A stretch of DNA of 63,258 nt, filler included, from Perkinsus chesapeaki ATCC PRA-425 (lineage: Eukaryota; Protista; Perkinsozoa): the NCBI GenBank assembly GCA_013115145.1. It is 9 parts of 9 records of this genome, joined end to end, with 100 filler letters (N's around TTAATTAATTAA, not from the genome) between each part and the next. Parts side by side here need not be neighbours in the genome. Positions count along the whole stretch, not along the records: positions 29,740 to 52,709 come from JAAPAO010000567.1; 8 more parts are not named here. One strand, 5' to 3'. Position numbers and translations under genes: made by a program. How positions within the stretch are numbered: position 1 is the first letter of the stretch; the number at the start of each line of letters is the position of its first letter. The notes beneath the pieces were generated by a model. It did not search any database. It was not told the origin of the DNA and saw nothing but the letters and a program-made list of their open reading frames with translations. Shown piece after piece: positions 30,387 to 52,583 of this stretch.

Positions 30387-32963
30387 CTAGTGCACCCACC
30401 AGAGGACAGAGATGGTCACCATAAGACCGACCTGCACAAAGGACCCGCGAGCAGAAAAGCTCGTATGCTTCTTGATGAGGTGATAGGCTGGGCAGTCGCC
30501 AGAGTCTCCGAACTGGGGATTCGCTTTTAAACTATCCCAGCTCTTAAACTCGATGATAGCCTCATGGATGCTGCTCCGCTCCGACAAATTGCGAGCCCAC
30601 ATATTCAAATGCTTGTGACCAGGAATCTTGTAGAACTGGCGGGGCATTGAGTCTGGCCCTAGCTGACTGGCCAGCAGAATGTTCCAAGTGTATGATGCTG
30701 TAGCCGGGGTGGGGAAAGGCATAGGCTTGTTCACCCACGACTCTCTGGTAATCTGAGACCACTCAGATCTGTCGAAGGTAGCCCAGTTAGCCAGATGACC
30801 CGCCATGTTGAGCGAAGGTAGAATATCGTCATAAGCGAGAACGTTACCTCCCCCGAAAGAGGCGACGTCCATAGGTTGATCAGCGAGGGAACCAAATGTG
30901 AAGGCAGTCGCTGCACCAGATAGTTGGAGAACTTGGGCGAATATAGAACATGCTGATCCACAATTACCATCCGTCACGAAAGAAACTTCAGACCAATACT
31001 CCCTATCGTAGCTCGGAGGGACAATTTTCGGCATCCTTTTCATCACAAGTTGACATTCAGCATACATACATGGCGTCGAGTAGTTAGAAGGTGTACCCCA
31101 ATGGCGCAGGTTAACATTCTGGTACTGCGTGAGAGGAGGGACGAACTGTTTACCAGTGGTTCGGTTGAATATTTCTTTATTATCGAAAAGGTACCAACCG
31201 TATTGTGGAGCAAGCTGTCGGCCTATCGAAGTCGATCTGTTCAGGAAAAGTCTTTCTTTCAGAAACTCCATGAAAGCAGTTGCCCTCCTAGTCGTCGAAC
31301 TCTCGGAGAGTATCTTCTCTTCAATGCCTCGCAACCTCGGAAGCTCACGTGCCTCATCGAGCTGCACACCCAAGTATTGCTTACCATACCGTAACAAGTC
31401 ATACAGCATCTCAAACCTTTCTTGGATGAAACTCTTATTTCCACCGAGGAGAGGATTCTCATAAAAGAATTTCTCAATTGTTTGATTGTAGTTCACGCCG
31501 AAAGAAGAAACCCATGTTTGCCAGTTCTCTGTCATGTGCCTGACTACAGGAGTGCATATCTGCTCCTTGGAGCCGACCAAATACCACAATAAAGCATAAA
31601 CCGATATACCATAGCCCCCGCCGTTGGAGGAGACATCGAAGAGCAGCCGAGTTACACCATGCTGACGTGCGTATTCTTGAACTCGAGGGAATCCCACGAA
31701 GAGTGCTGAAGCTCGGTCACTATTCAGCTCCTCGACTGGCTTGAAACTGGGGACGGATACGACAACCGCGTCACCGATGATAGAGTAACGGTAGCCGACA
31801 CCTAGGACCCAGCCGTCTGCAGCAGCACTTTGGACTTTCAGTTCTCCGAGAGGATTATCGCTCGCACCATCTTGATGACTTGAATCATATATGGTTTTGA
31901 CAAGTTTGGCATCTTCCTCATCCATTGGTGGCATGGATGCTCTCATGGCACTCCAGAGGGTTTCAAGCCGTTTCGGATACAACTTCACCTCGAACTCGAG
32001 TGCTTCATCGAAAGCCGGATTAGAATTGGTAATTATATTATAAGCCCGACTATTCACGATATCTCTTCCAGCTCTCTTGCTGTAGTCGGTGAGCCTTCCC
32101 AACCAATGAATAGTCTCAGTGGATCCATCGCTGAAGGTGATCTCAAGAGGTCCAGTTGGAGGAGGACTAATCGCTGCCGGACGGTCCACATAATCTTTAA
32201 CAAAGAAACGAGTATTCAGTCTTTGCAACATACCCTGCAATTCTCCAGCATCGGGCCCATCGTTAGAGACCATGTCCTGCATCCACTGGAGAACAGGTTT
32301 ACCATCAATCTCCGTAACGATATCACCATCTTTATGGAGGATACGAGAATTATACACCACCTCGTAGAGCGAGGCATAGTTGACAAGTTCGAGTGTTATA
32401 ACCTGCTTGTCGCCATCCATACGAGAGTTGAAGCGTATCGGCAGAACGTAGTAGAACGCCTGGAAAGGTGTGGTATACCTCGTATGAGCATCATTAAGAC
32501 GATTGAACTCATGCAGTAGGCCAAAGTGGAAGGGAGCTGCCTGCATATCTTGATTGAGGATATTCAACTGCTCATCAGTTGATAGCGGATCCAGCACGAC
32601 AGAGAACTGTCTTATCTGGGCATCAATAAGACCTTTGAGGTCGACATCGAGCTCGTGAAGTTGAAACCCACAGGTGTTGCTTTCAATAGAATTGTTCAGA
32701 CCATTGGCGATGTCGGTGAAGGCATATGACTCCGACACACCATATTTCAAGTTGTGGAGTGTAAACAGGGCGTTGAACTTGGTAATAGTAAGGCTGTTGA
32801 GGCAGTCACTCAAGTCATCAGCTCTCCCCCACAGGATATCATCTGATGCCCGCTCTTGCAGAATTGTACGGTCGCCAAAGCGGCTCAGACGCGCGCAAAG
32901 GTCGTCGTCAACCACCTGGGCTTGGCTGCCCGACAAGGCCAAAAGTAATAACCAGAAGTTCAT
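30387..32963 (-). CDS. Peptidase S41-like secreted/GPI-anchored protein, paralog P1 (858 aa)
   Basis: Signal peptide; LLFDVSSNGGG (S41 DLRxNxGG-like) and VTDGNCGSACS (catalytic-Ser-like) motifs; hydrophobic C-terminus; intronless. Confidence 0.8.
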   Translation of the reverse strand: MNFWLLLLALSGSQAQVVDDDLCARLSRFGDRTILQERASDDILWGRADDLSDCLNSLTITKFNALFTLHNLKYGVSESYAFTDIANGLNNSIESNTCGFQLHELDVDLKGLIDAQIRQFSVVLDPLSTDEQLNILNQDMQAAPFHFGLLHEFNRLNDAHTRYTTPFQAFYYVLPIRFNSRMDGDKQVITLELVNYASLYEVVYNSRILHKDGDIVTEIDGKPVLQWMQDMVSNDGPDAGELQGMLQRLNTRFFVKDYVDRPAAISPPPTGPLEITFSDGSTETIHWLGRLTDYSKRAGRDIVNSRAYNIITNSNPAFDEALEFEVKLYPKRLETLWSAMRASMPPMDEEDAKLVKTIYDSSHQDGASDNPLGELKVQSAAADGWVLGVGYRYSIIGDAVVVSVPSFKPVEELNSDRASALFVGFPRVQEYARQHGVTRLLFDVSSNGGGYGISVYALLWYLVGSKEQICTPVVRHMTENWQTWVSSFGVNYNQTIEKFFYENPLLGGNKSFIQERFEMLYDLLRYGKQYLGVQLDEARELPRLRGIEEKILSESSTTRRATAFMEFLKERLFLNRSTSIGRQLAPQYGWYLFDNKEIFNRTTGKQFVPPLTQYQNVNLRHWGTPSNYSTPCMYAECQLVMKRMPKIVPPSYDREYWSEVSFVTDGNCGSACSIFAQVLQLSGAATAFTFGSLADQPMDVASFGGGNVLAYDDILPSLNMAGHLANWATFDRSEWSQITRESWVNKPMPFPTPATASYTWNILLASQLGPDSMPRQFYKIPGHKHLNMWARNLSERSSIHEAIIEFKSWDSLKANPQFGDSGDCPAYHLIKKHTSFSARGSFVQVGLMVTISVLWWVH

Positions 32964-35363
32964 AGATAACCAGCGCTGAACAGTATCAAGATAATGGAAC
33001 TGAGGCGTGCGTACGTGCGTGTAAAACCCACGTAGAACACGCAGCGTGTTCTACGGGTTTCGCTATGAACCACGGGCATGATTCATGCAGCATGAACCCC
33101 TTATCATCTTACGGCAGACACCTGGGTGTTCTGCCTTGCCGAAAGCTTCAGTCCAGGAAGCGAGACCTCCGCGCGCTCCGGCGTACGAGGAGTCAGGGTG
33201 ATGACACGCTCACGCAATACTCCCGAGAAGCCATCGATAGCACGCGCCACAGCGCATATTGCATTTGCACGCTGCAACACCCGAGCTTCCCGACTTGGAT
33301 TGAATCCCTTAGGAGCTTACTTCATAGTGATGAGTTTCCGAATGCACACCCAAACACTATGCACCATCCTCCACATCGTATGGCAATCGCTCTAAGTGTA
33401 CGGATTTCGCTGAATCGCTGTTAACCCTAATGTCTCCTCCTGGCAAGCCCGAGCGGAGAAGCACGATACTAGTGACAAAGTGGACTCTTCTGGTGCAGAC
33501 TGGGATGCACGGGATCAGCATCGACTAGCACCCTCAGTCGCAGCTACACTGATATTTTCTTCCGCTGGTCTTCGATTTGTGGTCCAGCTGGGATCGAACA
33601 AGCTTACCGTCACTTGAAACTGTGTTATCGCGTGCATTTTTGTATTTACTCCAGAAGCCGCTGCTCGGAGATGACTTGCCCCGATTCCCTTGCAGACTGC
33701 ACTTAGGAGCTGCTTTTGTAATTTTCAGCGATTCGTGCGTGACGCATATTATGCGTCGCCTATCTGTTAGCGAGTTCCTGCTTCAAGACTGGAGAATATG
33801 TCTGCCAGAATAGACTGGGCTAACCTGAGAGTTTTTGGAACCACACCCTTGTTACAGCCTTCTCTGAGTCTAGTATACTCCTTCCTTTGAGACCCTTGTT
33901 GTCGACCCAGAGCTGGCTACCGGAGTTTGCAACCTCCAACCAAGCCTGGTACGCTCAGCGTGCTGCTATCGCCCCTATAACCGAAGTGACGAGAGAAATG
34001 GGTTATCTATTCTTTATCTTTCAGATTAGATTCCCAGCATGAAAAACTCGAGCCTTTAGCGGGTCGAAATTATCGACGGCATGTTGCCGAGTGAAGTAGT
34101 CCGGTTAATAGTTTTTCGGAGAAACTTTTTTTCCTGTATAAACTTTGTCCGCGTGTTGTGGGCAGGAAGAGGGTGAAACAAAGGTTCCTGAATCTTTTTT
34201 TAAGAATGACCATCTTAGAAATTCGGCCCAAAGACACTTCAGGGAATTTTTGCCGGAAGTTCTACCCAATAGATTTTCAGTCACCCTGTTGCGGTTCGAG
34301 TTAGCAGTCGTGCACGCCCTATCGAGAACCTATTTCCCCGCTGAGTACCCCCACCAGGTAGGGCCCCGATCTGCTGCAATAAATCGAGAAAAGTTGTGGA
34401 AGAAGTGCGAAGGGTCTATCTTGTCAAGTAGCTAGTTTGGTCAGCCTCACCCTTCCTATTCTCATACCGACCTTACAGACTCCGATTGAGAGTGAGGGTC
34501 TGCATAAACTGTCAACTCGTGAGGGATAAACCCTGTGCACTAAGCCGAACTTGGACTTTAACGATCCGTTGAAGCTCACAAGTTCGTTAATAACGAACTT
34601 GTGACTCAGAAGTTGTGAGCCACAAGTTGACACAGGGGAGCTCATTCATTGATGGCTCTATCCGATCCGAATCCAGGACCGACACTATATTATGAGAAAT
34701 TGTCGTTGATACTAATATGCAGACTAACTCCCCCCAATCTGGGGGCCCCGGATGTTTGATGTTACAGCAACTCCCTAGCTTGTCCCACTCAAGGTAACCT
34801 ACCGGACCATATGATACAGCTTGATGTGTCACCACTGCTATATTATCAGGCAGTCAGTCTCAGACTGACAGTCTAGTATAGTCTAGCTGCCTCAAATTCG
34901 TCAGCTAATAAGCCCGCTAAGAGTTAGGGGGCGCATTGCACCCACTTGGTCCGATGAACTCAGACCCTCAGAAACAGAACGTTGAAGTTGGGTAGTCTAA
35001 GAAAGATCCCCTCAGTATGCCATTGGAGGAATGTTGTATATGTACACTCTACACTGTAGAGTCCCAGCGAATATGGGAAACTCTAACCCGCCGCCAAAAC
35101 CTTTGTCCATCTGGATAACCTAGATGTGAATTGGGCTTCTGATATGCTCAGCCTGCATCGCAGGCGAACATCACACGAATCGTGACCTGCGAGTCCGACT
35201 GCGCCATGGGAAGGTACCAAGTTGAAGCAAGAACATCGCTTCAAACGAGGTATGAAAGAAATACCGTCTCAATGCCGAGTTCCTACGGTATATTTAGTAA
35301 ATATTATTTACAGCTTTTTTCAACCCACCCGAATCGGGCGGCCCGATAACAAGCCGTGCGTAC

Positions 35364-35385
35364 AAGCCGAATCGGCTTAGCCGAT
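35364..35385. repeat. 22-bp 8-mer scar, X=AAGCCGAT
   Basis: aagccga-atcggctt-agccgat, perfect. Confidence 0.85.
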
Positions 35386-36125: not shown

Positions 36126-38716
36126 TTAGCTCACCCACCACAGAATTAGGGCTACCACCATGGTAACTAAGTGCACAAGAGTCCCGCGAGCAGAGAAGCT
36201 CGCATGCTCCTTGGTAAGGCGATAGGCTGGGCAGTCGCCAAAGTCTCGGAACTGGGGATTCGCTTTCAAACTATCCCAGCTCTTAAACCCGACTATAGCC
36301 TCATGGATGCTGCTCCGCTCCGCCAAATTACGAGCCCACATATTCAAATGCTTATGACCGGGGATCTTGTAGAACTGGCGGGGCATTGAGTCTGGCCCTA
36401 GCTGACTGGCCAGCAGAATGTTCGAAGTGTATGATGCTGTAGCCGAGGTGGGGAATGGCATAGGCTTGTTCACCCACGACTCTCTGGTAATCTGAGACCA
36501 CTCAGATCTTCCAAAGGTAGCCCAGTGACCCAGATGACCCGCCGTGTTGAGTAAAGGTGAAACTTCGTCATAAGCGAGAACGTTGCCTCCCCCGAAAGAG
36601 GCGACGTCCATAGGTTGATTAGCGAGGGAACCAAATGTGAAGGCAGTCGCTGCGCCAGATAGTTGGAGAACTTGAGTGAATATAGAACATGCTGATCCAC
36701 AATTACCATCCGTCACGAAAGAAACCTCAGACCAATACTCCCTATCGTAGCTCGAAGGGACAATGTTCGGCATCATCTCCATTACAAATGCACATTCAGC
36801 AGGCATACCCGGCGTCGAGTAATTGGAAGGTGTACCCCAATGGCGCAGGTCAACATTTTGGTACTGTGAGAGAGGAGGGACGAATTGTCCACCAGTAGTT
36901 CGGTTGATTATACCTGTGTTATCGAAGAGAAACCAACCGTACTGTGGGGCAAGCTGTTGGCCGATCCCAGTCGACCTGTCCAGGAAAAGTCTCTCTTTCA
37001 AAAACTGCTTGAAAGCAGCTGCTCTTCTAGTCACCGACCTCATGGAAAGTATTCTATCTTCGATGTCATGCAACCTCGAAAGCTCACGTGCCTCATCGAA
37101 TCGTATACCTATCTGCTGCTGACCATACCGTAACAAGTCATACAGCATCTCGAACCTTTCATGAATGAAGCCCTTGTCCCCACCGAGTAGAGGATTTTCA
37201 CAGAAGAACTCATCGATCGTCTGATTGTATTTCACGCCGAAAGAAGAAACCCATGTTTGCCAGGTCTGTGTCATGCGCCGGACTGTAAGCGGGCGTATTT
37301 GCTCTTTGGAGCCGACAAAATACCCCAATAATGCAAAAACTGATAAACCATAGCCTTCTCTATTGGAAGAGACATCGAAGAGCAGCCGAGTTACACCTTC
37401 ATGCTGACGTGCAAAGTCTTGGACGTCAGTAAACCCAGCATAGAGTAGCGATGGTAGGGATTGCCCAGTCGCAAACAAAGTTGGTGTGAAATGGAAGAGG
37501 ACCACGACAACCGCGTTTCCGATAATAGAATAACGGTAACCAGCGCCTAAGACCCAACCATCTACAGCAGCACTTCGAAGGTTGAAGTGTTCTTGGGAGT
37601 CGTCTCTTATACCAGCGTGAGGCCTCGAGTCATGCATGGCCTTGATAAGTTCGGCATCTTCCTTATCCATTGGTGGTATGGATGCTCTCATGGTATTCCA
37701 GAGAGTTTCAAGTCTCCTCGGATAAAACTTCACCTCGAACTTGAGTGCTTCATCGAACTTCGGATTACTACTCGCCAGTCTACTGAGAGCCGACGTACTC
37801 ACGAGATCTCTTCCAACTATGTTGCTGTGGTCGGTGAGCCTGCCCAACCAATGGATGGTCTCAGTGGATCCGTCGCTGAAGGTGATCTCGAGAGGCCCAG
37901 TTGGTGGAAGATTCTCCAGCGGTAAACGAACCAAATATGGGTTCACAAAAAAGCGAACGTTGAGCCTCTGTAGCATACCCTGCAACTCCCCACCGTCATC
38001 GTTGGAGACCATGTCTTGCATCCACTGGAGCACGGGTTTACCACCAAGCTCGGTCACGATATCACCATCTTTGTGGAGGATAGTGGAATTATACACCGGC
38101 TCATAGTATGAAGCATGGGCGACAAGTTCGAGTTTAATAACCTGGTTGCTGCCATCCATACGAGAGTTGAAGCGTATCGGTAACACATAGAAGAATGGAT
38201 CAAAGGGTGCGATATACCTCGTATGAGCATCATTGAGACGATTGAATTCACGCAGCAGGCCAAAGTGAAAGGGAGCTGCCTTCATATCTTCTTTAAGGAC
38301 ATTTAACTGCTCATCAATTGTCAGAGGATCCAGTATATCTGAGGACTCTTTTATCTGAGCATCAATAAAACCCTTAAGGTCGACGTCGAGGTCGTGAAGC
38401 TTGAAACCGCACGTGTTGTTCTGGATGGAGCGGTTCAGACCGCTAGCCATGTCGGTGAAGGCATACGATTCCGCTACGCCATATTTCAAGTTGTGGAGAG
38501 TAAACAGAGCACTTAACTTGCTCATAGTGAGGCTGTTGAGGCAATCGCTCAATTCATCAGCTCTCCTCCACAGAAAGTAGATCCCTGCGGCCTGTTGCAC
38601 AACTGTACGCGGCGTACAGTACGCCCACCAGAGCGGTTTAAGCGTGCGCAGAGGTCATCGTCAGCCACCTGGGATTCGATGCCAAGAAAGTTTAAGATTA
38701 ACAGCCACAAAGCCAT
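36126..38716 (-). pseudogene. Peptidase S41-like paralog P2, frameshifted by a 14-bp insertion
   Basis: The signal peptide (MALWLL, ATG 38716) is in one frame and the body in another. Removing 14 bp at 38604-38625 restores GRTVVQQAAG, matching P1/P3 DRTILQE. Confidence 0.85.
38604..38625. repeat. 22-bp 8-mer scar inside P2, X=TGTACGCC
   Basis: tgtacgc-ggcgtaca-gtacgcc, perfect; P1 and P3 have a single-copy site. Confidence 0.9.
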
Positions 38717-39415
38717 AGACCCCCAAATATGCAGTTGCCAAGTAATACTGAGGGAACGGGGCCGACAAATGTGCACGCATGCGTGCCCTGGAGCCGTCAT
38801 AGTCTGACCTGGCTCAGTGTAAATCGTTCGCTGGAGGTGAGGCATTGATACTAGACTCCCGGATTCGTGCTTTTTAGAACCACTACGGTACTTGAAGAAT
38901 CCCCTTGGGACATTTTTTCCGTTATGAATTATAAAAGACACAAAACAGCTGTTACAAGTTCACCTTTTCAGCGGCAGAGCTAAGAAATGTCTACCCGCGT
39001 CACTTGCAATGTAAGTCTCGCATACCCTGGTCTAGCATCAAATTATTCCAAGCTACTCTCATCTGAAAGCTCAACCTTTGCATAGTATACTTCCCGCCTT
39101 AACATTTGCGAAGAAAGTTGATATTAGAACGAAGGTAGGCTACCAGAACTCGCCACTTTCTGACAAGAGTGCTAGGCATTCTGTCTCCTCTACAACTGGC
39201 AAAATGAGGCAATAATACTGTATTGGGGCCTACTAGAGAACTTCTCGGCATGCTCAGATAGGTTGACGCGTCCAGTTAAGTGGTGGCGGTGGCTAGATTG
39301 GGTAGTCGCGCAAAGTCCTGTTGAGAGTCTGTTCTCTCGCAGAGTCCGGCCGTCACGGACTGCTCTGATTTGGGCAGGGGCGCCAACGTTGCTTACCGAG
39401 CTCAGAGTGCTTACC

Positions 39416-40308
39416 AGAAAACTTCACGCAAAAATACCCAGTGCGAGAGGATATCTTGTCACGCAGAGTGCTTATAGTGTGCTGGTGAATTAGTGGGCAA
39501 GGTTCTATTTTTGTAACGCTGATAGCAGCACTAATCGGGCCATAGGGCTATGGTGTGTGGGAGACTTCGTACAACTTCCGCAATACTGAATGAAGAGAAT
39601 CATTTGCATGAAGGTATTGATCATGTACTACTTAGACTGGGATATCAGTTTGATAAATTATTTATTTGCAAGTTGTTACGGTGACTGTCTGAAAAGTGCT
39701 GATTGTCTGTCGGAGACTAGGATAATATGTGAGGCTCGCATTGTGAGCCGTTAGGTGTTTGAGTATTCCGGTGTCACTTAGGGCTCCTTGAAGCTAAGCT
39801 CGTCGAGAGTTATATAATATGCGGACTTCTCAGGGGAACATTGACTTGGCTTCGCAACGGACTTGTGGACTCATGTACTCGTGAGTTCGGCGATTCAATT
39901 GGTATTCAGTGCCGAGGAGATACTTCAACACAAAATGTGACTCATGGAAAAAGTCGTCTGAGAAACTGAGAGGAATGATATACAGGGAGGAACAGTCTCA
40001 AGAAAAGCGCAAACCCCTGGTGTTTCAACATCTGGTGTTGTTCTCCCAAAAGCTGAAGCCGATCACCGACTGGACACCCAGCACGAAGGTCCGATAAAGA
40101 GAGGGGCGTCCGTAGGCGGAGTTGCCCCAATAAAATCGAGTACAGTGTCAATAGCTAACTCATATATCAGCATTGCTCATAACCAACACCCAACTCCGAC
40201 ACTTATCATGCAATCCATCACTGAAGATGGTTATGTGTTCAAATGCATGGAGAGCAAGCTGCGGCCTAACTTCGAGCTTTCTCGGTTATCCTCTTTAGTC
40301 TCCTCCGC
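39416..40308 (+). repeat. About 0.9-kb intergenic segment, copy 1 (duplicate at 44511-45515)
   Basis: Long collinear identity blocks with 44511-45515. Confidence 0.9.
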
Positions 40309-40694
40309 AGTGCGTCACCCGGCGACTTAAACCACTTGTCTCTTCTCAGTTATACTAGCCCAATATTATGTGCCGACATTCCACTCATCTACTCAACACA
40401 CAGTTCTTATGACAATCAGATAAGAGACTGATAACAGGCGAGAATCAAGAATGGCGATTCAGCCTCACAGAAATGAGTTTCTTGGGTTTGCGAAGTACGG
40501 AGGTACAAGGGTACATTGAACTACAAATAAGTCCCTTGACCAGAAGCGTAACATCAAAACCACTCCTTCCGGAACCATCTGATGTTTCTCTATCATACCT
40601 TGGTCAACAACATGGCCAAACAAGACGGGACAATCCTTAAGTACACAGACAAACGACAAAAAAGAAAAAGTATTATGGACCTAACCAAGTTATC

Positions 40695-43277
40695 TTAGTG
40701 CACCGACCAGAGGACTAAGACGACAGCCATGGTAACAAAGTGCCCAAGAGTCCCGCGAGCAGAGAAGCTCGCATGCTCCTTGGTAAGGTGATAGGCTGGG
40801 CAGTCGCCAGAGTCCCCAAACTGGGGATTTGCTTTTAAACTATCCCAGCTCTTAAACTCGATGATAGCCTCATGGATGCTGCTCCGCTCCGACAAATTGC
40901 GAGCCCACATATTCAAATGCTTGTGACCAGGAATCTTGTAGAACTGGCGGGGCATTGAGTTCGGCCCCAGCTGACTGGCCAACAGAATGTTCCAAGTGTA
41001 TGACGCTCGAGCCGACGTAGGAAAAGGCATAGGCTTGTTCACCCACGACTCTTTGGTAATCTGAGACCACTCAGATTTTCCAAAGGTAGCCCAGTTACCC
41101 AGATGACCCGCCATGTTGAGCGAAGGTAGAATATCATCATAAGCGAGAATGTTGCCTCCCCCGAAAGAGGCGACGTCCATAGGTTGATCAGCGAGGGAAC
41201 CAAATGTGAAGGCAGTGGCCGCGCCAGATAGTTGGAGAACTTGGGTGAATATAGAACATGCTGATCCACAATTACCATCCGTCACGAAAGAAACCTCAGA
41301 CCAATACTCCTTAACGTAGCTCGAAGGGACAATGTTCGGCATCGTCTCCATTACAAATGCACATCCAGCATCCATACCTGGCGTCGAGTAATTGGAAGGT
41401 GTACCCCAATGGCGCAGGTCAACATTTTGGTACTGTGAGAGAGGAGGGACGAATTGTTCACCAGTAGTTCGGTTGATTATGCCTGTGTTATCGAAAAGAA
41501 ACCAACCGTACTGTGGGGCAAGCTGTTGGCCGATCCCAGTCGACCTGTCCAGGAAAAGTCTCTCTTCCAGGAACTGCTTGAAAGCAGCTGCTCTTCTAGT
41601 CACCGGCCTCTTGGAGAGTATTCTATCTTCGATGTCATGCAACCTCGAAAGCTCACGTTCCTCATCGAATTGCACGCCCAAGTGCTGCTTACCATACCGT
41701 AACAAGTCATACAGCATCTCAAACCTTTCTTCAATGAAATTCTTATTTCCACCGAGTAGAGGATTCTCATAAAAGAATTTCTCAATTGTTTGATTGTAGT
41801 TCACGCCAAAAGAGGAAACCCATGTTCGCCAGGTCTCTGTCATGTGCCTGACTACAGGAGAGCATATCTGCTCCTTGGAGCCGACCAAATACCAAGATAA
41901 AGCATAAACCGATATACCATAGCCCCCGCCGTTGGAGGAGACATCGAAGAGCAGCCGAGTTACACCATGCTGACGTGCGTATTCTTGAACTCGAGGGAAT
42001 CCAACGAAGAGTGCTAAAGCTAAGGATCGATCGCTATTCAGCGCCTCAACTGGCACGAAACTGGGGACGGACACGACAACCGCGTCACCGATGATAGTGT
42101 AACGGTAGCCAACATCTTGGACCCAGCCGTCTGCAGCAGCACTTTGGACTTCCAGTTCTCCGAGAGGATCGTCGCTCGTACCATCTTGATGACTTGAATC
42201 ATATATGGTTTTGACAAGTTTGGCATCTTCCTCATCCATTGGTGGCATGGATGCTCTCATGGCACTCCAGAGGGTTTCAAGCCGTTTCGGATACAACTTC
42301 ACCTCGAACTCGAGTGCTTCATCGAAAGCCGGATTAGAATTGGTAATTATATTATAAGTCCGACTATTCACGATATCTCTTCCAACACTCTTGCTGTAGT
42401 CGGTGAGCCTTCCCAACCAATGAATAGTCTCAGTGGATCCGTCGCTGAATGTGATCTCAAGAGGTCCAGTTGGGGGAGGACTAATCGCCGTCGGACGGTC
42501 CACATAATCTTTAACAAAGAAACGAGTATTTAGTCTTTGCAACATACCCTGCAACACTCCAGCGTCGGGCCCATCGTTAGAGACCATGTCCTGCATCCAC
42601 TGGAGGACAGGTTCACCATCAATCTCCGTAACGATATCACCATCTTTATGGAGTATACTAGAGTTATACACCACCTCGTAGAGCGAGGCATAGTTGACAA
42701 GTTCGAGTGTTATAACCTGCTTGTCGCCATCCATACGAGAGTTGAAGCGTATCGGCAGAACGTAGTAGAAAGCCTGGAAAGGTGTGATGTACCTCGTATG
42801 AGCATCATTAAGACGATTGAACTCGTGCAGTAGGCCAAAGTGGAAGGGAGCTGCCTGCATATCTTGATTGAGGATATTCAACTGCTCATCAGTTGATAGC
42901 GGATCCAGCACGACAGAGAACTGTCCTATCTGGGCATCAATAAAACCCTTGAGGTCGACATCGAGCTCGTGAAGTTGAAACCCACAGGTGTTGCTTTCAA
43001 TAGAATTGTTCAGACCATTGGCGATGTCGGCGAAGGCATATGACTCCGCCACACCATATTTCAAGTTGTGGAGTGTAAACAGGGCGTTGAACTTTGTAGT
43101 AGTAAGGCTGTTGAGGCAGTCACTTAAGTCGTCAGCTCTCCCCCACAGGAAATCCACTGATGCCTGCTCTTGCAGAATTGTACGGTCGCCGAAGCGGCTC
43201 AGACGCGCGCAGAGGTCATCGTCAACCACCTGGGCTTCGCCGCCCTGGAAGGACAGAAATAACAACCAGAAAACCAT
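40695..43277 (-). CDS. Peptidase S41-like paralog P3 (860 aa)
   Basis: Same motifs as P1; intact, intronless. Confidence 0.8.
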   Translation of the reverse strand: MVFWLLFLSFQGGEAQVVDDDLCARLSRFGDRTILQEQASVDFLWGRADDLSDCLNSLTTTKFNALFTLHNLKYGVAESYAFADIANGLNNSIESNTCGFQLHELDVDLKGFIDAQIGQFSVVLDPLSTDEQLNILNQDMQAAPFHFGLLHEFNRLNDAHTRYITPFQAFYYVLPIRFNSRMDGDKQVITLELVNYASLYEVVYNSSILHKDGDIVTEIDGEPVLQWMQDMVSNDGPDAGVLQGMLQRLNTRFFVKDYVDRPTAISPPPTGPLEITFSDGSTETIHWLGRLTDYSKSVGRDIVNSRTYNIITNSNPAFDEALEFEVKLYPKRLETLWSAMRASMPPMDEEDAKLVKTIYDSSHQDGTSDDPLGELEVQSAAADGWVQDVGYRYTIIGDAVVVSVPSFVPVEALNSDRSLALALFVGFPRVQEYARQHGVTRLLFDVSSNGGGYGISVYALSWYLVGSKEQICSPVVRHMTETWRTWVSSFGVNYNQTIEKFFYENPLLGGNKNFIEERFEMLYDLLRYGKQHLGVQFDEERELSRLHDIEDRILSKRPVTRRAAAFKQFLEERLFLDRSTGIGQQLAPQYGWFLFDNTGIINRTTGEQFVPPLSQYQNVDLRHWGTPSNYSTPGMDAGCAFVMETMPNIVPSSYVKEYWSEVSFVTDGNCGSACSIFTQVLQLSGAATAFTFGSLADQPMDVASFGGGNILAYDDILPSLNMAGHLGNWATFGKSEWSQITKESWVNKPMPFPTSARASYTWNILLASQLGPNSMPRQFYKIPGHKHLNMWARNLSERSSIHEAIIEFKSWDSLKANPQFGDSGDCPAYHLTKEHASFSARGTLGHFVTMAVVLVLWSVH

Positions 43278-44542
43278 AGGTATCCGAGAAAGTGATGGGG
43301 GCGGGTGAAGTTAGGGTGATGGGGCTGATTCAGCGCCACTTTCCAGAGTGAATACGCATGCGTGCCCTGGGGCTGGTGTAGCCCGACTTAGTTCTGTGTA
43401 ACTGCATGCTTTGAGGGCGGGCAATTAATGTAGTATATCCTAACTCCATCTTTGAGGATAAGCTAGAACACGAGGAAGTGTTTTTGAAGGTTTCATCGCG
43501 AGCGTGCCCACAACAGTGTTCACGAACTCGAATTTTGTGCGCCAGAGCTGGAAAGAATGTATGCCAACGCGATCTGCGTAACACTATTCGTGAGCTATGC
43601 TATAATAGAGACTCTATCTGACAGTAGTATGTATGTCGTCCCATAATGCGGGTATACTCATGCCGACGTATGCATGCAACGGCAAATCGAAACTGGACCT
43701 TACCGCTGACCAGCGGCCAGTCTGCAGTCTCTCCAAATAAAGGGAGCACTGCGCCCTAAGCCTTCTATCTTCTCCGGAAACGACTGCTTGCATAGCCAAG
43801 TCTGGCAATAACTCCAGTATAAGATCCCCAGAATGACCCCTGCCTGAGGAGCACGAACAACGCTGTATTGGCAGGCTCCGAGCCTAGGGCGCCATGGACT
43901 AGCGCGGTAGCGCCGTAATGGCGCCGTGAGCTCTGTAGGGACTACGAACCGAAGACTACGGCCTGTAGTTAGACAATGCTCGGTTTACAGAGGCACTGGC
44001 GGCCGTCAACCACTGTCAGCAACTATATCCATGCGTTCTGTAGGAGAGGATCTCCCTGCAGGCACGAATCGACTTTCACACGCCTTCTGCGACCCCCATT
44101 CCTTAGGGGAAGCTCTATCCGTGGCCAAGAATCTGGGGTTTTAAGGATGTTTTGATGTACAACGCAAACACCAGATGAACAGGGAGGTCCGACTTCCGGA
44201 ACTGTCAAGCTCACGTGAAAGCCAGAAATTCAGGACAGCTAGCTGCTGTTGTGAGAGCTAAACAACAATGGAACTTAAGCTCAGCTTGACGCTAGTACTA
44301 ATGATAGTGTGGTAAGTTATGTATAGATTCTTGCCTCCCTTTGGTATCTTGGGTTCCCTGATGATTAACAGTAACCAACTGAATCCTCTCTGATAGGAGT
44401 TGCTGAGAACCGTTAAGAGTGTACAGATAATCGAAGAATAAGAGAAGTGAAAGCTTGCCTCGCAGATCCCGATAGTCGTTCCGTTGCTTAACGAACCCAG
44501 AAGGCATACGAGAAAACTTCACGCAAAAATACCCAGTGCGAG

Positions 44543-44564
44543 AGGGTATCATACCCTGGGTATG
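44543..44564. repeat. 22-bp 8-mer scar, X=AGGGTATG
   Basis: agggtat-cataccct-gggtatg, perfect; single-copy site at 39448-39455. Confidence 0.9.
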
Positions 44565-45108
44565 TTATCTCGCAGAGTGCTTATAGTGTGCTGGTGAATT
44601 AGTGGGCAAGGTTCTATTTTTGTAACGCTGATAGCAGCACTAATCGGGCCATAGGGCTATGGTGTGTGGGAGACGTCGTACAACGTCCGCAATACTGAAT
44701 CGAGAGAATCATTTGCATGAAGGTATTGATCATGTACTACTTAGACTGGGAGATCAGTTTGATAAATTATTTATTTGCAAGTTGTTACGGTGACTGTGTG
44801 AAAAGCGCTGATTGCCTGTCGAAGACTAGGATAATATGTGAGCCGCTATGCGTTTGAGTATTCTGGCTTCACTGAGGGCGTTCCTTGAAGCCAGGCTCGT
44901 CAAGCTGCGTTCGAATTAACGAGCATCACTAGTTATGGTTAGCGGATATACGTCGACAGTTATATAATATACGGACTTCTCAGGGGGCTCGCCTGAGTGG
45001 AGCATCGCGATGGCTTCACAACGGACTTGTGGACTCATGTACTCGTGATTTGGACGATTCAATCAGAATTGAGTACCGAGGAGATACTTCAACACAAAAT
45101 GTGACTCA

Positions 45109-45130
45109 TGGAAAACTTTTCCAGGAAAAG
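45109..45130. repeat. 22-bp 8-mer scar, X=TGGAAAAG
   Basis: tggaaaa-cttttcca-ggaaaag, perfect; single-copy site at 39945-39953. Confidence 0.9.
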
Positions 45131-45944
45131 CCGTCTAATAAACTGAGAAAATGATATACAGGGATGAATAGCCCCAAGAAAAGCGCAAGCGGTTTGCGGC
45201 AAGCCCCTGGTGTTTCAACATCTGATGTTGTTCTTTCAAAAGCTGAAACCGATCATCGACTGGACACCTAGCACGAAGGTCAGATAAAGAGAAGAGCGTC
45301 CGTAGCTGGAGCTGCCGCAATAAAATCGAGTACAGTGTCAACAGCTAACTCAAATATATGAGTCTCATACATCAGCATTGCTCATACCAATACCCAACTC
45401 CGACACTTATCATGCAATCCATCACTGAAGAAGGTTATGTGTTCAAATACATGGAGAGCGAGCTGCAGACTAACTCGCAGTTCACTCGCTTATCCTCTCA
45501 AGTCCCCTCCTCCGCTGTTTGTAGTTCCCCCTGCAGTTCGTGTAGTGTATATATTCCTCATCGTATTCCAACTAAATCACCATATATCTACTCGCATCAG
45601 CCAACACAGTCTGCTAATTATGGCTAATGCCAAGCCTAGATTGCAAATGGATCATGTTTATCCTTGTATGGGGACATAGCGCAATACCGCTGAACATGTC
45701 GTAAAGACGAATAACAGATCCATCGAATGCCAGGCAAACGCACCCATGAGTGTTCGGGACGAATCTCCACAGTGTCTTCTTTCTCCGAATGAGTGGCGTT
45801 TCTCGAATTTTATTAGTATTCGACCACCAAACGTAAGGCTTGCCGCCTCGAGTGAAAAGCACGGCTGCAGGCCCAGATCGCCTAAAGGGCCCAATAGCAA
45901 TGCTATTATAGCTTCTTGGAACCTATCGCCGTAACACAAAGTGT

Positions 45945-45966
45945 GTACAGACTCTGTACTACAGAG
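45945..45966. repeat. 22-bp 8-mer scar, X=GTACAGAG
   Basis: gtacaga-ctctgtac-tacagag, perfect. Confidence 0.85.
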
Positions 45967-46591
45967 ATAAGGCCATCCTGGTCAGGTTCCCGCAAGAAAC
46001 CTTATAGAACAGCTATTGGGGAACGGTGGGAGATACGACCAGACATCCATGGCAATATCGTCGTTTGCCCCTTTATGAGATATACACTTTAAACGAAGCG
46101 TAAGAATCCCAGAGTTAGGCATTGGAGAGCGAACTTCCAAAGTGAAGCCGAACTAAACAGTAACAACGCCGTGCGGAACCCCACAGTAGAAGTTCGGCGC
46201 GCTGACAGCATTGAACACACTCAACAAAATCAGCATCAGTGCTGGACAATATTGAAACACTTTTAGTTCTCAGCATCTTGAGCTGTTTCGGTGAACACCG
46301 GAGCTGGTCTTTTTCTTAACGTCGAGCCCTCCTCTTCATCTCCCTCTGGCTTGCTATCCTCGATTGACGTACTCATCTATACGAGAAGATGAAATTTCGC
46401 CCAGATTGCGCAGATGCAAGAAAATAATGATTAATATTCAACGAATACGCGAGAAAGGTCACAAATTCGCGCTTCGAGCTGTTGCCTAAAATACACTATC
46501 GACTCCGAGATGTATTTCGGATCAACGTGATACATCTAGGCCCCTCGCTATTGCGAACCATACCTGCCGCGATGCGGACAGAGGAAAATGT

Positions 46592-47344
46592 TTACATTCC
46601 TTTCAACACTGCTTTCAAATGCCTACGGTTGAAATTTGGGGGAATCGAATCTCTTCGGGTTTCGATGTAGGCTTGCTCCGCTGACAAGAGAGCCAGAGCA
46701 CCACGGAGACTCACATCTTCAAGCTCGTCTGGCTCCTCCTCCGCCTTGCGTGTTTCCTCCTCCAACTTCTCCTTGTAACGTCTCATCTCCACAGCCTCCT
46801 GACGAGCCTTCTCTCGAGCTCTCATACGAGCGTTCCTGAGATAGTAACGGCCTTGGACTGGAGTGGGGGAATAATTGTATCCAGCTATCAGTGGATGCAG
46901 TCTGGGCAAACAACGAGAGAACATTTCATGCGATTAAGGAACACAATTTCGTGTCTCATTAGATTCTTGTCAAACCTTCCATCATATCTCCGCACTAGAA
47001 GAATTCTTTACCCTCGGGAGCAGTTGACGCTGATGAGCGCAAATTGAACATAAATAGACGTTTAGAGAAACGAACAAGTCCACAGCCTCGGGGCCACTTG
47101 TCGAAGGGCTTACTTGGCGATGAGATCCGCCTTCTCGTCGCGGACTATGAAAAGAATGGCCTCGACGAACAGTGTGAGAACACAGCAGAATCCACCAAAT
47201 AGGTATCTCTGAAAGTTAGGCTGTTAACGGAAGGGACGGTATTAGCTCACGTAAGTTGGGTCCCAATACTCCCTGAACACCCTGATAAAATAGTAACCAA
47301 AAGCATAGGAGCCAATGAAGGCCATAATGAAGTGAAGGGCCGTG
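46592..47344 (-). CDS. Partial multi-exon gene, two-TM protein resembling Vma12/TMEM199
   Basis: GT-AG exons 47251-47344, 47114-47208 and 46592-46835 splice in frame: ALHFIMAFIGSYAFGYYF...RYLFGGFCCVLTLFVEAILFIVRDEK...coiled coil. The family call is from memory of the motif only. Confidence 0.45.
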
Positions 47345-47883
47345 CTGAAGAGGACAGAGACTGTTCAACAAATGATAAGAGCTTCAGTAGCAGACATGGC
47401 AAAGTTACAAAGAGCGTGGACGTGCTCAGCATTGCTCGTGCCTAGATATAATAGCTATCCAGTTCTTATGGAAATTGAAGTCGTTTCTTCGAAATGGAAC
47501 CCACTGTCGTACTGCTCGGCACTACCATGCGTTCGGGCACACTTATTCCCGAGTGAGCCGAGGAGCCGTACTTCGAAGAGGCTCATTTATTTGCTCTATA
47601 ATAGTCCTTATACACATGATATTCAACAGCTATTGAGATGCATTCGCCATATATATTCAATTAATAGTCTACCTCCCCTGTTCAGATATGACCCTTAAAA
47701 CCCGCGCAGGTTCGAACCCCAGCCCTACCTAATATTCTCACTCACACCCTTAACCTCCTCAGCCACTGAGGACTCTCCCTGCTTTCTATGAGCCGCTGCC
47801 ACGAAATTGAGCTTTCTCGCGCCCTTCAAATCGGCGCCAATCGATCTCTGGTACCTTCCAAACAACTATCATTTGAAGTATCA

Positions 47884-48064
47884 TTGACAATCATTATATG
47901 ATAGGACCGATTAAGTTATTATTGAAAGCGTTGACAGTCGTTATATGATAGGACCGATTAAGTTATTATTGAAAGCGTTGACAGTCGTTACATGATAGGA
48001 CCGATTAAGTTATTATTGAAAGCGTTGACAGTCGCTATATGAGGAGAGATCAAGTTATTATTGA
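47884..48064. repeat. Minisatellite, about 3.9 x 47 bp
   Basis: Units start at 47884, 47931, 47978 and 48025; head-to-tail, no spacers. Confidence 0.95.
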
Positions 48065-48077
48065 TTCCAGTGGCCAC

Positions 48078-48780
48078 CTACTTGCGCTCCGCAGCCTCGG
48101 CTCTCATACGTTCCAATGGAGTCAACTTGGAAAGCTGAGCAGAGGGTGAATCCAGACGACCAATTCCAGACGCCTCATAGTACAATCTCCGCATCATTAT
48201 TAAGGCGAGCAACAACTTGGCAGTTTCTAGTGACGTCGGCGAGATTGAAGGAACTCCGCTTGTCGTTGTTGACCTGCACAGAGAGACAGTGAAAACTAGA
48301 TAACCTCTGCCAACGTAAAAACTGACCAGCACAAGCGACAGGAAACTGAGATATCGCTCAACGGCCTCCCGTGGATTCTGCAAGGTGGACTGTATACACA
48401 AATCAACTGATATAAGTATAATTTAATTATAGGTCTACAAGTACCAATTCTTATTATTGAAGCCCAGTCTGCAAATTCCGAAGCGAACAGCTATCAAGCG
48501 AGGATCGACCGGAACTGGAAAGACGAAGGCACTTCGAAGGGGTAACAGGATAGCATTTCTCCAATAGGAACACATATTCTATTTTATCATCTCCGCACAA
48601 GTAGCACTCCACCTCAAAGCCAAGTAGACAAGCCCAGTAGTAGTATTACTCTTTTGTTATGCTCATCGATCATCTTGCACAGATCATCCAAATCGATCGA
48701 CTCCCGATGCCTATATACCTTACGTATCGGTGCTGGCTGGGCGTTCAGGAAATAGCGAACCTCGTCGCTCATCGATACCA
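48078..48780 (-). CDS. Possible multi-exon hypothetical gene
   Basis: Coding-like segments (SMSDEVRYFLNAQPAPIRKVYRH...; LLLALIMMRRLYYE...) with nearby GT/AG; exon structure not resolved. Confidence 0.3.
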
Positions 48781-49152
48781 GCACTTGAGTTGGCATATAT
48801 GAAAAAGAATAGGGACAGTAACTAATCCGTAAAACCGGGTTTTCGGGTTTCGGGTTTTCACTTCTGGACACAAAACCTTCAATAAAGATAGAAATAATAC
48901 AACATGGTTCATGGTGTAACATCAGCCGTCAATCGAAATGGACCTGTGACAAAAATCTGGCCATTATTAAAGTCGGTGCGCAACGGGCAGGATGCCCATT
49001 GATTTAGGTCCCAATTAAGTGAATGATGACTTGCTAAAAACAAGTTGTACAGTATAGAAAATAATATAACCTGTTAATTTCTATAATACTAAAATTACTG
49101 CAGCTAAGAACGGAGACAGCACGCGTGCACAACCCAATACACCAAAGTGTAT

Positions 49153-52100: not shown

Positions 52101-52583
52101 CCATTTCGGGTCATCCCAAGCTCCATCTGGGACAGCGACGCCTCCGTTACGGTCCAAGGTGTTGATGACACAGTTATACCGATGAACAGCAGATGAATGA
52201 TGGTAATAGAAGCGCATGCTAGGAGTAGGGGAAGCTCGAGTGGAATATGGCCGGCCAGGGTCGGGGGGCACTACACAGCGGAATAAAATTACTGATGGTC
52301 TCGCCTCACCAAAAACCGACAGTAGAAGGTTGCGTTCAACGGTAAGATGAGAAGCCTCGCTGTTGGCGGTAGCCGATGACCACGAGCTGGCCCTGGCTTC
52401 ACGGACGCCAAGGAGGCGGTCCCTGGCCCAGTCCTCTGCAGTGGACGAATCAGAGGAATCGATCTCCAGTTGCGAAGGGCGGGCAGGCTCCTCGATTGAA
52501 CCGGCAGCTTCGTCGTTAGATAGTTCTAAGTCGCTCTGGATGTGTGAGGTTGTTGGTGATAGAGATGATTTATGAAGGGTCAT
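49153..52583 (-). CDS. Tubulin-tyrosine-ligase-like polyglutamylase (TTLL4/5-like), multi-exon
   Basis: WIYKP.SSSCGRGI, IQRYI.NPLL, DLRLYVLVTS, HLTNYSVNK (exon ending 51497). Exons 50592-50639, 50441-50545 and 50256-50397 give IIK/TVISAE...IFE/IYGFDIIVD.NLRPWLLEVN. Also GFRRIFP near 49430. Confidence 0.9.

What the first reader, a model, noticed from the sequence alone, without database searches (positions are those of the whole stretch)
39416..45515. Duplicated 1-kb segment polarises five scars: nearly all short indels between the copies are scars
Copy 1 has a scar at 39727-39748 (X=ATGTGAGC, 1 mismatch) where copy 2 has single X (44836-44843). Copy 2 has scars at 44543, 45109, 45184 (X=CGCAAGCC, 1 mismatch) and 45348-45370 (X=ACTCATAT, +1 variant) where copy 1 has single X-like sites (39448, 39945, 40008, 40158). 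This shows directly that the scars are insertions of 13-15 bp onto a single 8-mer. They arose independently in both copies after duplication, at about 5 events per 2 kb of non-coding DNA.
Basis: seen in the sequence. Interest (0 to 1): 0.85.

Follow-up and report, generated by a model that had tools for sequence, protein, structure and literature searches.

The report
hAT-type transposon excision scars in Perkinsus
The 13-15-bp differences between two copies of a duplicated intergenic kilobase in the shellfish parasite Perkinsus chesapeaki are real, uniform 22-bp scars (an 8-mer, its reverse complement, then the 8-mer again); they have the geometry and target preference of footprints left when a hAT-type cut-and-paste transposon leaves, and they are common in three Perkinsus species, where some of them break genes.

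Summary
The piece is a complete 22,970-bp contig of Perkinsus chesapeaki. The two about 1-kb copies are 89.5% identical. Every 13-15-bp indel inside their homology is a scar of the form X(1-7)+revcomp(X)+X(2-8). There are six of them, not five.

The same 22-mer occurs 82 times (30 exact) in 212 kb from P. chesapeaki, P. marinus and P. olseni. It occurs 0 times in shuffles and essentially 0 times in an oomycete control. Only the 7+8+7 geometry with an 8-mer is found.

Outgroup paralogs show that three such events are derived insertions.

Four features point to excision footprints of a hAT-like transposon:
- an 8-bp target duplication;
- odd palindromes centred on the complement of the terminal duplicated base;
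- T at position 2 and A at position 7 of the target (45% against 26%, p=5e-8);
- rarer "un-annealed" variants that keep two inverted copies plus inverted flank bases.

I infer that the two flank hairpins are opened far from their tips and joined by annealing of the inverted 8-mer.

What is missing: no resident element or transposase was found, and short classical footprints are absent.

Verdict: a new variant of a known kind, confidence about 0.75.

The parts
39380..40330 (.). Copy 1 of the duplicated intergenic segment (downstream of gene 3, upstream of gene 2)
   Evidence: Alignments; 89.5% identity to copy 2
44475..45520 (.). Copy 2 of the duplicated intergenic segment (upstream of gene 3)
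39727..39748 (.). Scar, X=ATGTGAGC, 1 mismatch; only in copy 1 (copy 2 has single X at 44836-44843)
44543..44564 (.). Scar, X=AGGGTATG, exact; only in copy 2 (copy 1 site 39448-39455)
   Evidence: present in reads-derived contigs
44981..45002 (.).
45109..45130 (.). Scar, X=TGGAAAAG, exact; only in copy 2 (copy 1 site 39945-39952)
45184..45205 (.). Scar, X=CGCAAGCC, 1 mismatch; only in copy 2 (copy 1 site 40008-40015)
45348..45370 (.). Decayed scar, X=ACTCATAT, one extra base and substitutions; 15-bp indel against copy 1 site 40158-40165
45893..45914 (.). Scar just beyond the duplicated part, X=AATAGCAT, 1 mismatch
45945..45966 (.). Scar, X=GTACAGAG, exact
38604..38625 (.). Exact scar (X=TGTACGCC on +, GGCGTACA on -) inside the 5' coding part of gene 2, about 95 nt after the conserved ATG; shifts the frame; absent from three paralogs
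39002..39023 (.). Scar, X=ACTTGCAT, 2 mismatches
33075..35385 (.). Cluster of nine scars with at most 2 mismatches in the intergenic region upstream of gene 1 (starts 33075, 33742, 34598, 34731, 34854, 35040, 35290, 35326, 35364). It includes a compound, nested palindromic structure at 34574-34640.
30387..32963 (-). Gene 1 of a three-copy tandem array (858 aa; sources name the family 'tail specific protease domain-containing')
36126..38716 (-). Gene 2 of the array; its reading frame is interrupted by the scar at 38604
40695..43277 (-). Gene 3 of the array (860 aa)

Best explanation
Each scar is the footprint of one insertion and later excision of a cut-and-paste transposon that works like a hAT element.

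Proposed steps:
1. Insertion duplicates an 8-bp target X.
2. At excision the transposase nicks one nucleotide into each flank and closes each flank into a covalent hairpin. The left flank then reads X1-7 followed by the complement of X8 and onward. The right flank is its mirror image.
3. In Perkinsus the hairpins are opened well away from the tip. Each end therefore carries a 3' tail holding an inverted copy of X.
4. The two tails are complementary over those 8 nt. They anneal, flaps are trimmed and gaps are filled. The product is X1-7 + rc(X) + X2-8.
5. The scar is inherited and then decays by ordinary mutation.

Shown here: the geometry, the target preference, the insertion polarity, the inheritance and decay, and the variants with two inverted copies plus inverted flank bases.

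Inferred: the identity of the enzyme and element, and the repair route (nicking far from the tip followed by microhomology annealing).
For: 1. Fixed 8-mer and 7+8+7 only: 6 exact in the piece, 30 exact and 82 with at most 2 mismatches in 212 kb of three Perkinsus species, 0 in shuffles. A Pythium control locus has 0 hits with at most 1 mismatch.

2. Both halves of a scar are odd palindromes centred on the complement of the terminal target base. This is what is described for Ac/Ds footprints (PMC5873905). Perfect odd palindromes with arms of 7 or more number 130 against 19 even ones (shuffles 14 and 11). With arms of 10 or more the counts are 14 against 1.

3. Target logo: T at X2 and A at X7 in 74 of 164 half-sites (45% against 25.6%, p=5e-8). 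All other positions are flat. This matches the Hermes preference nTnnnnAn (PMC10368747).

4. Eight 'un-annealed' footprints of the form X1-7 rcX spacer rcX X2-8 were found against 0 in shuffles. Their spacers begin with the reverse complement of the left flank, or end with that of the right flank. At L002 1779 the spacer GGCA is 3 nt from each side overlapping by GC. At L006 7184, 9 nt come from the right flank.

5. Outgroups show insertion polarity.

6. Mismatch classes 0, 1 and 2 are about equal (30/26/26). The deviant base falls equally in the left, middle and right parts (63/56/66). This fits steady production and decay after formation.

7. Density is 0.76 per kb in intergenic DNA and 0.19 per kb in gene spans, and scars come in clusters.
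Against: No resident element with terminal inverted repeats and an 8-bp duplication was found in about 190-212 kb. No transposase could be searched for, because I had no query sequence from any tool.

Classical hAT footprints with short (1-4 nt) palindromic tracts are not enriched. The uniform product differs from everything reported for Ac/Ds, Hermes or TcBuster.

The density (up to 9-15 scars in 2-3 kb) requires very high or very long-lasting activity.

No presence/absence polymorphism of a scar was seen (the two P. olseni assemblies compared are virtually identical).

The loci sampled are biased towards one gene family.
Confidence: 0.75

Rival explanations
1. The scars are made by a hAT-like enzyme, but without a standing population of mobile elements. 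This could be a domesticated transposase, or a very low-copy element that integrates and re-excises almost at once ('hit and run'). It would act as an endogenous mutator of open, intergenic DNA.
For: 82 scars but no resident element in 212 kb. Scars cluster strongly in gene-upstream regions. The product is uniform, which suggests a stereotyped reaction.
Against: Scars accumulate over time while resident copies are at a steady state. A few tens of active copies per genome would therefore give the same picture. Both flanks must already carry X, so something must have sat between two copies of X.
Confidence: 0.12
2. Replication template switching: the polymerase copies X, switches to the complementary strand and copies back through X, then returns. 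This would be a miniature version of inverted triplications.
For: The topology is duplication-inversion-duplication, as in the small inverted triplications of PMC13334657. Perfect palindromes without a loop can arise by inter-strand switching.
Against: The unit is always exactly 8 with a one-base offset. No k=6, 7, 9 or 10 occurs. The described events average about 150 bp with spacers. A T2/A7 target bias and inverted flank bases in the spacers of double-copy variants are not predicted by this model.
Confidence: 0.05
3. For the focal pair only: some 22-mers predate the duplication, and the single 8-mer in the other copy arose by precise deletion between the flanking direct repeats of the scar.
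For: A scar contains 6-7-nt direct repeats around a hairpin, an ideal substrate for slippage. PMC13334657 reports precise loss of inverted triplications. The focal scars carry 8 mismatches in six scars, rather many for a per-lineage divergence of about 5%.
Against: No scar is shared by both copies. All three events that could be polarised with outgroups are gains. The 22-mers must in any case have arisen by insertion.
Confidence: 0.1
4. Assembly or sequencing artefact.
For: None found.
Against: Scars are present in the Sanger-era P. marinus assembly, in P. olseni and P. chesapeaki assemblies, and in contigs of four runs from two studies. Decayed copies exist.
Confidence: 0.01

Closest known systems
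Excision footprints of hAT transposons (Ac/Ds, Hermes, hobo, TcBuster)
   Same: 8-bp target duplication. Flank hairpins that give palindromic nucleotides centred on the complement of the base next to the element (PMC5873905). nTnnnnAn target preference (PMC10368747). Microhomology use at the joint.
   Different: Known footprints are heterogeneous, mostly with 1-3 nt palindromic tracts and small deletions; arms reach 20 nt in yeast. Here one product dominates, with a complete inverted copy of the 8-mer shared by the two ends. Short-tract forms are not detectable, and the scars are dense enough to be the main 13-15-bp indel class. No element or transposase has been identified yet.
P nucleotides at V(D)J coding joints; Transib and MULE (Muta1) flank hairpins
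   Same: Covalent hairpins on flanking DNA are opened off-centre, which creates inverted repeats of the flank.
   Different: Those enzymes nick at the boundary: Muta1 gives a 43+43 nt hairpin (PMC5499845). They therefore predict even palindromes and an 8+8+8 product. Neither is seen here. Transib and RAG duplicate 5 bp.
Small inverted triplications and origin-dependent inverted-repeat amplification (template switching)
   Same: Duplication-inversion-duplication topology.
   Different: Those are about 150 bp on average, variable in length and with spacers (PMC13334657). Here the unit is fixed at 8 nt with a one-base offset and a sequence preference at the target.
Introner-like elements with inverted and direct repeats in Amoebophrya (PMC7789003)
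   Same: A related alveolate lineage, with short inverted plus direct repeats that can sit inside genes.
   Different: Those are introns of defined families, with 3-5-nt direct repeats and their own sequence. Scars contain nothing but the local 8-mer, and they shift the frame.

Membership tests
hAT-superfamily excision footprint | 8-bp target-site duplication | tested here: met
   Only k=8 gives hits. k=6, 7, 9 and 10 give 0 exact hits.
hAT-superfamily excision footprint | Palindromic nucleotides centred on the complement of the duplicated base that abutted the element (a nick one nucleotide into the flank, hence odd palindromes) | tested here: met
   The geometry is 7+8+7 and never 8+8+8. Odd against even perfect palindromes: 130 against 19 with arms of 7 or more, and 14 against 1 with arms of 10 or more. 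The feature is described for Ac/Ds in PMC5873905.
hAT-superfamily excision footprint | Target preference nTnnnnAn (Ac/Hermes/hobo type) | tested here: met
   T2/A7 in 74 of 164 half-sites, p=5e-8; other positions flat. The preference is cited in PMC10368747.
hAT-superfamily excision footprint | Both flanks pass through hairpins, so inverted flank bases beyond the duplication can appear at the joint | tested here: met
   Eight X1-7 rcX spacer rcX X2-8 sites against 0 in shuffles. Spacers match the reverse complement of the left and/or right flank.
hAT-superfamily excision footprint | Resident elements with terminal inverted repeats and 8-bp duplications in the same genome | tested here: inconclusive
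   None convincing in about 190-212 kb. The sample is far too small to exclude tens or hundreds of copies per genome.
hAT-superfamily excision footprint | A hAT transposase (DDE/RNase H-like core, hAT dimerisation domain, BED finger) encoded in the genome | not testable with these tools
   No tool gave me a hAT query sequence and the Perkinsus proteomes cannot be searched by domain name. Unannotated ORFs in the loci gave only tyrosine-recombinase hits.
hAT-superfamily excision footprint | Heterogeneous joints with short (1-4 nt) palindromic tracts and small deletions, as in plants, yeasts and animals | tested here: not met
   Forms with a+b<8 are at shuffle level; only a+b=8 is enriched. Paralog alignments show no 6-10-bp indel class of that kind.
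MULE / Transib / RAG-type flank hairpin footprint | Nick at the element boundary, giving even palindromes, with an 8-10 or 5-bp duplication | tested here: not met
   0 hits for 8+8+8 or 9+9+9. Even palindromes are not enriched.
Template-switch small inverted triplication | Variable unit length, spacers, no target motif | tested here: not met
   Fixed 8-nt unit and a T2/A7 bias. Compare with PMC13334657.

The most novel reading that the evidence does not exclude
Perkinsus may carry an endogenous, hAT-like 'hit-and-run' mutator: a domesticated or extremely low-copy transposase whose transient insertions are almost always reversed. Together with an unusual hairpin-processing and annealing repair route, every event would become the same 22-bp palindromic scar. 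The scars would then be the dominant small-insertion process of the genus and a countable fossil record of tens of thousands of events. They would not be the debris of ordinary transposon families.
Probability: 0.15. Interest if true: 0.85.

Novelty: new variant of a known kind. Interest (0 to 1): 0.66.

Why it matters
If the reading is right, Perkinsus genomes record each past insertion-and-excision event as a uniform, machine-readable 22-mer. Rates, ages, target choice and local hopping of a DNA transposon could then be measured directly from sequence. That is not possible where footprints are a few ambiguous bases.

It also points to an unusual way of resolving DNA hairpins and joining ends in a perkinsid: no short palindromic tracts, and joints made by annealing an 8-nt inverted copy.

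In practice, scars add 14 bp. They frameshift genes (gene 2 of this array and the P0013 gene in L004) and have led annotators to call spurious introns. Gene models in all Perkinsus assemblies should therefore be checked against the motif.

In the sampled non-coding paralog pairs, scars are the main class of 13-15-bp indels, at roughly one per 16-32 substitutions.

Tried and rejected
- No third copy of the duplicated kilobase exists on the contig, so the five focal scars could not be polarised directly.
- Reads were available only as assembled contigs. The single 14-bp 'left out' signal is cross-mapped copy 1, not a polymorphism.
- The P. olseni orthologous locus from a second assembly differs by 2 bases in 22.7 kb, so it gave no presence/absence data.
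- Three scans for resident elements (8-bp duplication plus inverted termini) found only chance-level or tandem-gene hits.
- The larger indels between paralogs are a tandem duplication or remain unresolved; they are not elements.
- The two tyrosine-recombinase ORFs in the P. marinus locus were considered as the agent. I rejected them on geometry: such enzymes cut with 6-8-nt staggers, excise precisely and do not duplicate the target by fill-in.
- Programmed elimination with scars remade in every generation was rejected, because the middle part of a scar mutates as often as the outer parts.
- Rfam gave no match anywhere in the piece. Folding of single scars is unremarkable.
- Literature searches for Perkinsus footprints, hAT in Perkinsus, or a duplication-inverted copy-duplication footprint found no prior description. 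The non-homologous end-joining status of Perkinsus was not found either.
- A dinoflagellate control locus could not be fetched.


Full report
**What the piece is.** The 22,970-bp piece is a whole contig of Perkinsus chesapeaki. Its proteins match FOL47 entries of that species at 100%. It carries three tandem paralogs on the minus strand (30387-32963, 36126-38716, 40695-43277). Sources name the family 'tail specific protease domain-containing'. A tubulin-tyrosine-ligase gene lies at 51447-52583. The two copies in the finding are the intergenic stretches upstream of gene 2 and gene 3.

**The observation.** A global alignment of 39380-40330 with 44475-45520 has 824 matches and 97 mismatches. The indels within the homology are 1, 1, 2 and 53 bp, plus six of 13-15 bp. 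Each of the six is a scar.
- The sixth is at 44981-45002 and has three mismatches.
- One scar is in copy 1 and five are in copy 2. None is shared.

The exact anatomy is X1-7, then the full reverse complement of X, then X2-8. That is 22 nt in place of 8.

**More than chance, and one geometry only.** The piece holds 6 exact, 7 one-mismatch and 4 two-mismatch 22-mers. Shuffles give 0, 0 and 0.03. Other designs give no exact hit: units of 6, 7, 9 or 10, and 8+8+8, 8+8+7 or 6+8+6.

**Elsewhere.** I fetched loci around paralogs and around a second gene. They come from P. chesapeaki (L001, L004, L005, L007), P. marinus (L002, L009) and P. olseni (L003, L006, L011).
- In 212 kb there are 82 non-overlapping scars: 30 exact, 26 with one mismatch and 26 with two. 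Shuffles give none.
- A Pythium locus has no hit with at most one mismatch.
- The P. marinus assembly is an older, independent project. Contigs of four runs from two studies reproduce the scars of copy 2. An artefact is therefore excluded.
- Density is 0.76 per kb between genes and 0.19 per kb within gene spans.

**Polarity.** The contig has no third copy of the focal kilobase, but other scars can be polarised.
- L001 is the closest paralog of unit B (93% identity). The exact scar at 38604-38625 is absent from L001, which has the identical single 8-mer. It is also absent from genes 1 and 3.
- The exact scar at L001 2507 is absent from units B and C.
- In L001, two further 14-bp indels between internal duplicates are both scars, one in each copy.
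- Scars in coding sequence interrupt conserved frames. At L004 10789, paralog proteins read straight across the scar in two different frames, and the deposited model hides this with a 107-nt 'intron'.

Scars are therefore derived 14-bp insertions. Pooled over three non-coding paralog pairs there are 10 scars per 325 substitutions. In the focal pair there are 6 per 97.

**Inheritance and age.** Mismatch classes 0, 1 and 2 are about equally populated, as expected for steady production followed by decay. The deviant base lies in the left, middle or right part equally often (63, 56, 66). Scars are thus made perfect, inherited, and then mutate. This also rules out scars that are remade in every generation.

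**Mechanism: four independent pointers to a hAT-like transposase.**
1. The unit is 8 bp, the target duplication of hAT elements.
2. Each scar is two overlapping 15-nt odd palindromes whose centres are the complements of X8 and X1. [quoted passage not shown] Boundary-nicking enzymes such as the MULE Muta1 make even hairpins (PMC5499845) and would predict 8+8+8, which is absent. Across the Perkinsus loci, perfect odd palindromes outnumber even ones 130 to 19 with arms of 7 or more, and 14 to 1 with arms of 10 or more. Shuffles give equal, low numbers.
3. The target logo is flat except for T at position 2 and A at position 7: 74 of 164 half-sites, p=5e-8. This is the Hermes preference nTnnnnAn (PMC10368747).
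4. Eight sites have the form X1-7, rcX, spacer, rcX, X2-8, against none in shuffles. Their spacers are what two separately opened hairpins would contribute. At L002 1779 the 4-nt spacer is three inverted bases of the left flank and three of the right flank, overlapping by two. At L006 20804 it is two inverted left-flank bases. At L006 7184, nine inverted right-flank bases. At L006 18585, three inverted left-flank bases. One such event, in-frame, sits in the coding sequence of the L001 gene and is absent from the three window paralogs.

**How the common scar forms (inference).** After excision each flank ends in a hairpin that contains an inverted copy of X. If both are nicked several nucleotides from the tip, the two 3' tails are complementary over the inverted 8-mer. 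Annealing, flap removal and fill-in then give exactly 7+8+7. Joints without annealing give the two-copy variants. Joints using short tracts would give 16-20-nt footprints, but those are at chance level. Hairpin opening in Perkinsus therefore seems to occur far from the tip, and annealing dominates. I could not establish which repair genes Perkinsus has.

**What is missing.**
- No resident element with inverted termini and an 8-bp duplication was found in the loci.
- I could not search for a hAT transposase.
- No scar polymorphism was seen.

Because scars accumulate while resident copies are at a steady state, a small active family is compatible with these numbers. A transposon-poor 'hit-and-run' process is not excluded.

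Template switching has the right topology (PMC13334657). It predicts neither a fixed 8-nt unit, nor the T2/A7 bias, nor inverted flank bases.

**Known or new.** Ten literature searches found no description of such scars in Perkinsus or of a uniform duplication-inverted copy-duplication footprint. I classify the scars as a new variant of a known kind. The chemistry is that of hAT excision, but the product is uniform and the abundance exceptional. Extrapolating 0.39 per kb to a genome of tens of megabases gives tens of thousands of scars. That figure comes from a biased sample and is only an order of magnitude.

Noticed in passing
L002 5719-6903 (+) and L002 21093-22286 (-): Two unannotated ORFs of 395 and 398 aa in the P. 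marinus locus match the Phage_integrase (tyrosine recombinase) family (E 1e-4 and 2e-6). Direct repeats lie nearby (6962-7112/7765-7915 and 19309-19909/20172-20769). They look like Crypton- or DIRS-like elements and are probably unrelated to the scars.
   Followed up: partly
L004 10775-10881: The deposited gene model for P0013 calls a 107-nt intron that covers an exact scar at 10789-10810. Paralog proteins align across the scar in two frames, so the gene is frameshifted (or one haplotype is) and the intron is probably spurious.
   Followed up: partly
window 36126-38716 (-): Gene 2 of the tandem array is interrupted by an exact scar about 95 nt after the conserved start codon. The deposited protein (799 aa) starts downstream of it.
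   Followed up: yes
L001 3725-3762: A compound two-copy footprint plus CTG-repeat expansion adds 42 nt in frame to the coding sequence of the P0003 gene. It is absent from the three window paralogs.
   Followed up: partly
window 34574-34640; L009 4556-4645; L006 7170-7240; L009 23981-24039: Nested or long perfect odd palindromes with arms of 13-29 nt lie next to scars. Some collapse partly when scars are removed step by step, which suggests repeated events at one site. Others are not decoded.
   Followed up: partly
window 30131-30331 and 47884-48064: There are tandem arrays of a 23-bp unit (8.7 copies, next to a 100-N gap) and of a 47-bp unit (3.9 copies). The 23-bp array is shared with L001 downstream of the paralog.
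   Followed up: no
window 40695-52583: A deposited protein (P0001, 1387 aa) fuses gene 3 with the distant tubulin-tyrosine-ligase gene. This is probably a mis-joined gene model.
   Followed up: no
L003 versus L010: Two P. olseni assemblies (GCA_013115115 and GCA_013115125) differ by only 2 substitutions and one 3-bp repeat change over 22.7 kb. They represent essentially the same genome.
   Followed up: yes
window 43271 to 40727: Contigs of all four runs contain a junction that goes back 2,545 bases across gene 3. It most likely comes from a cross-mapping paralog or from copy-number variation of the tandem array.
   Followed up: no
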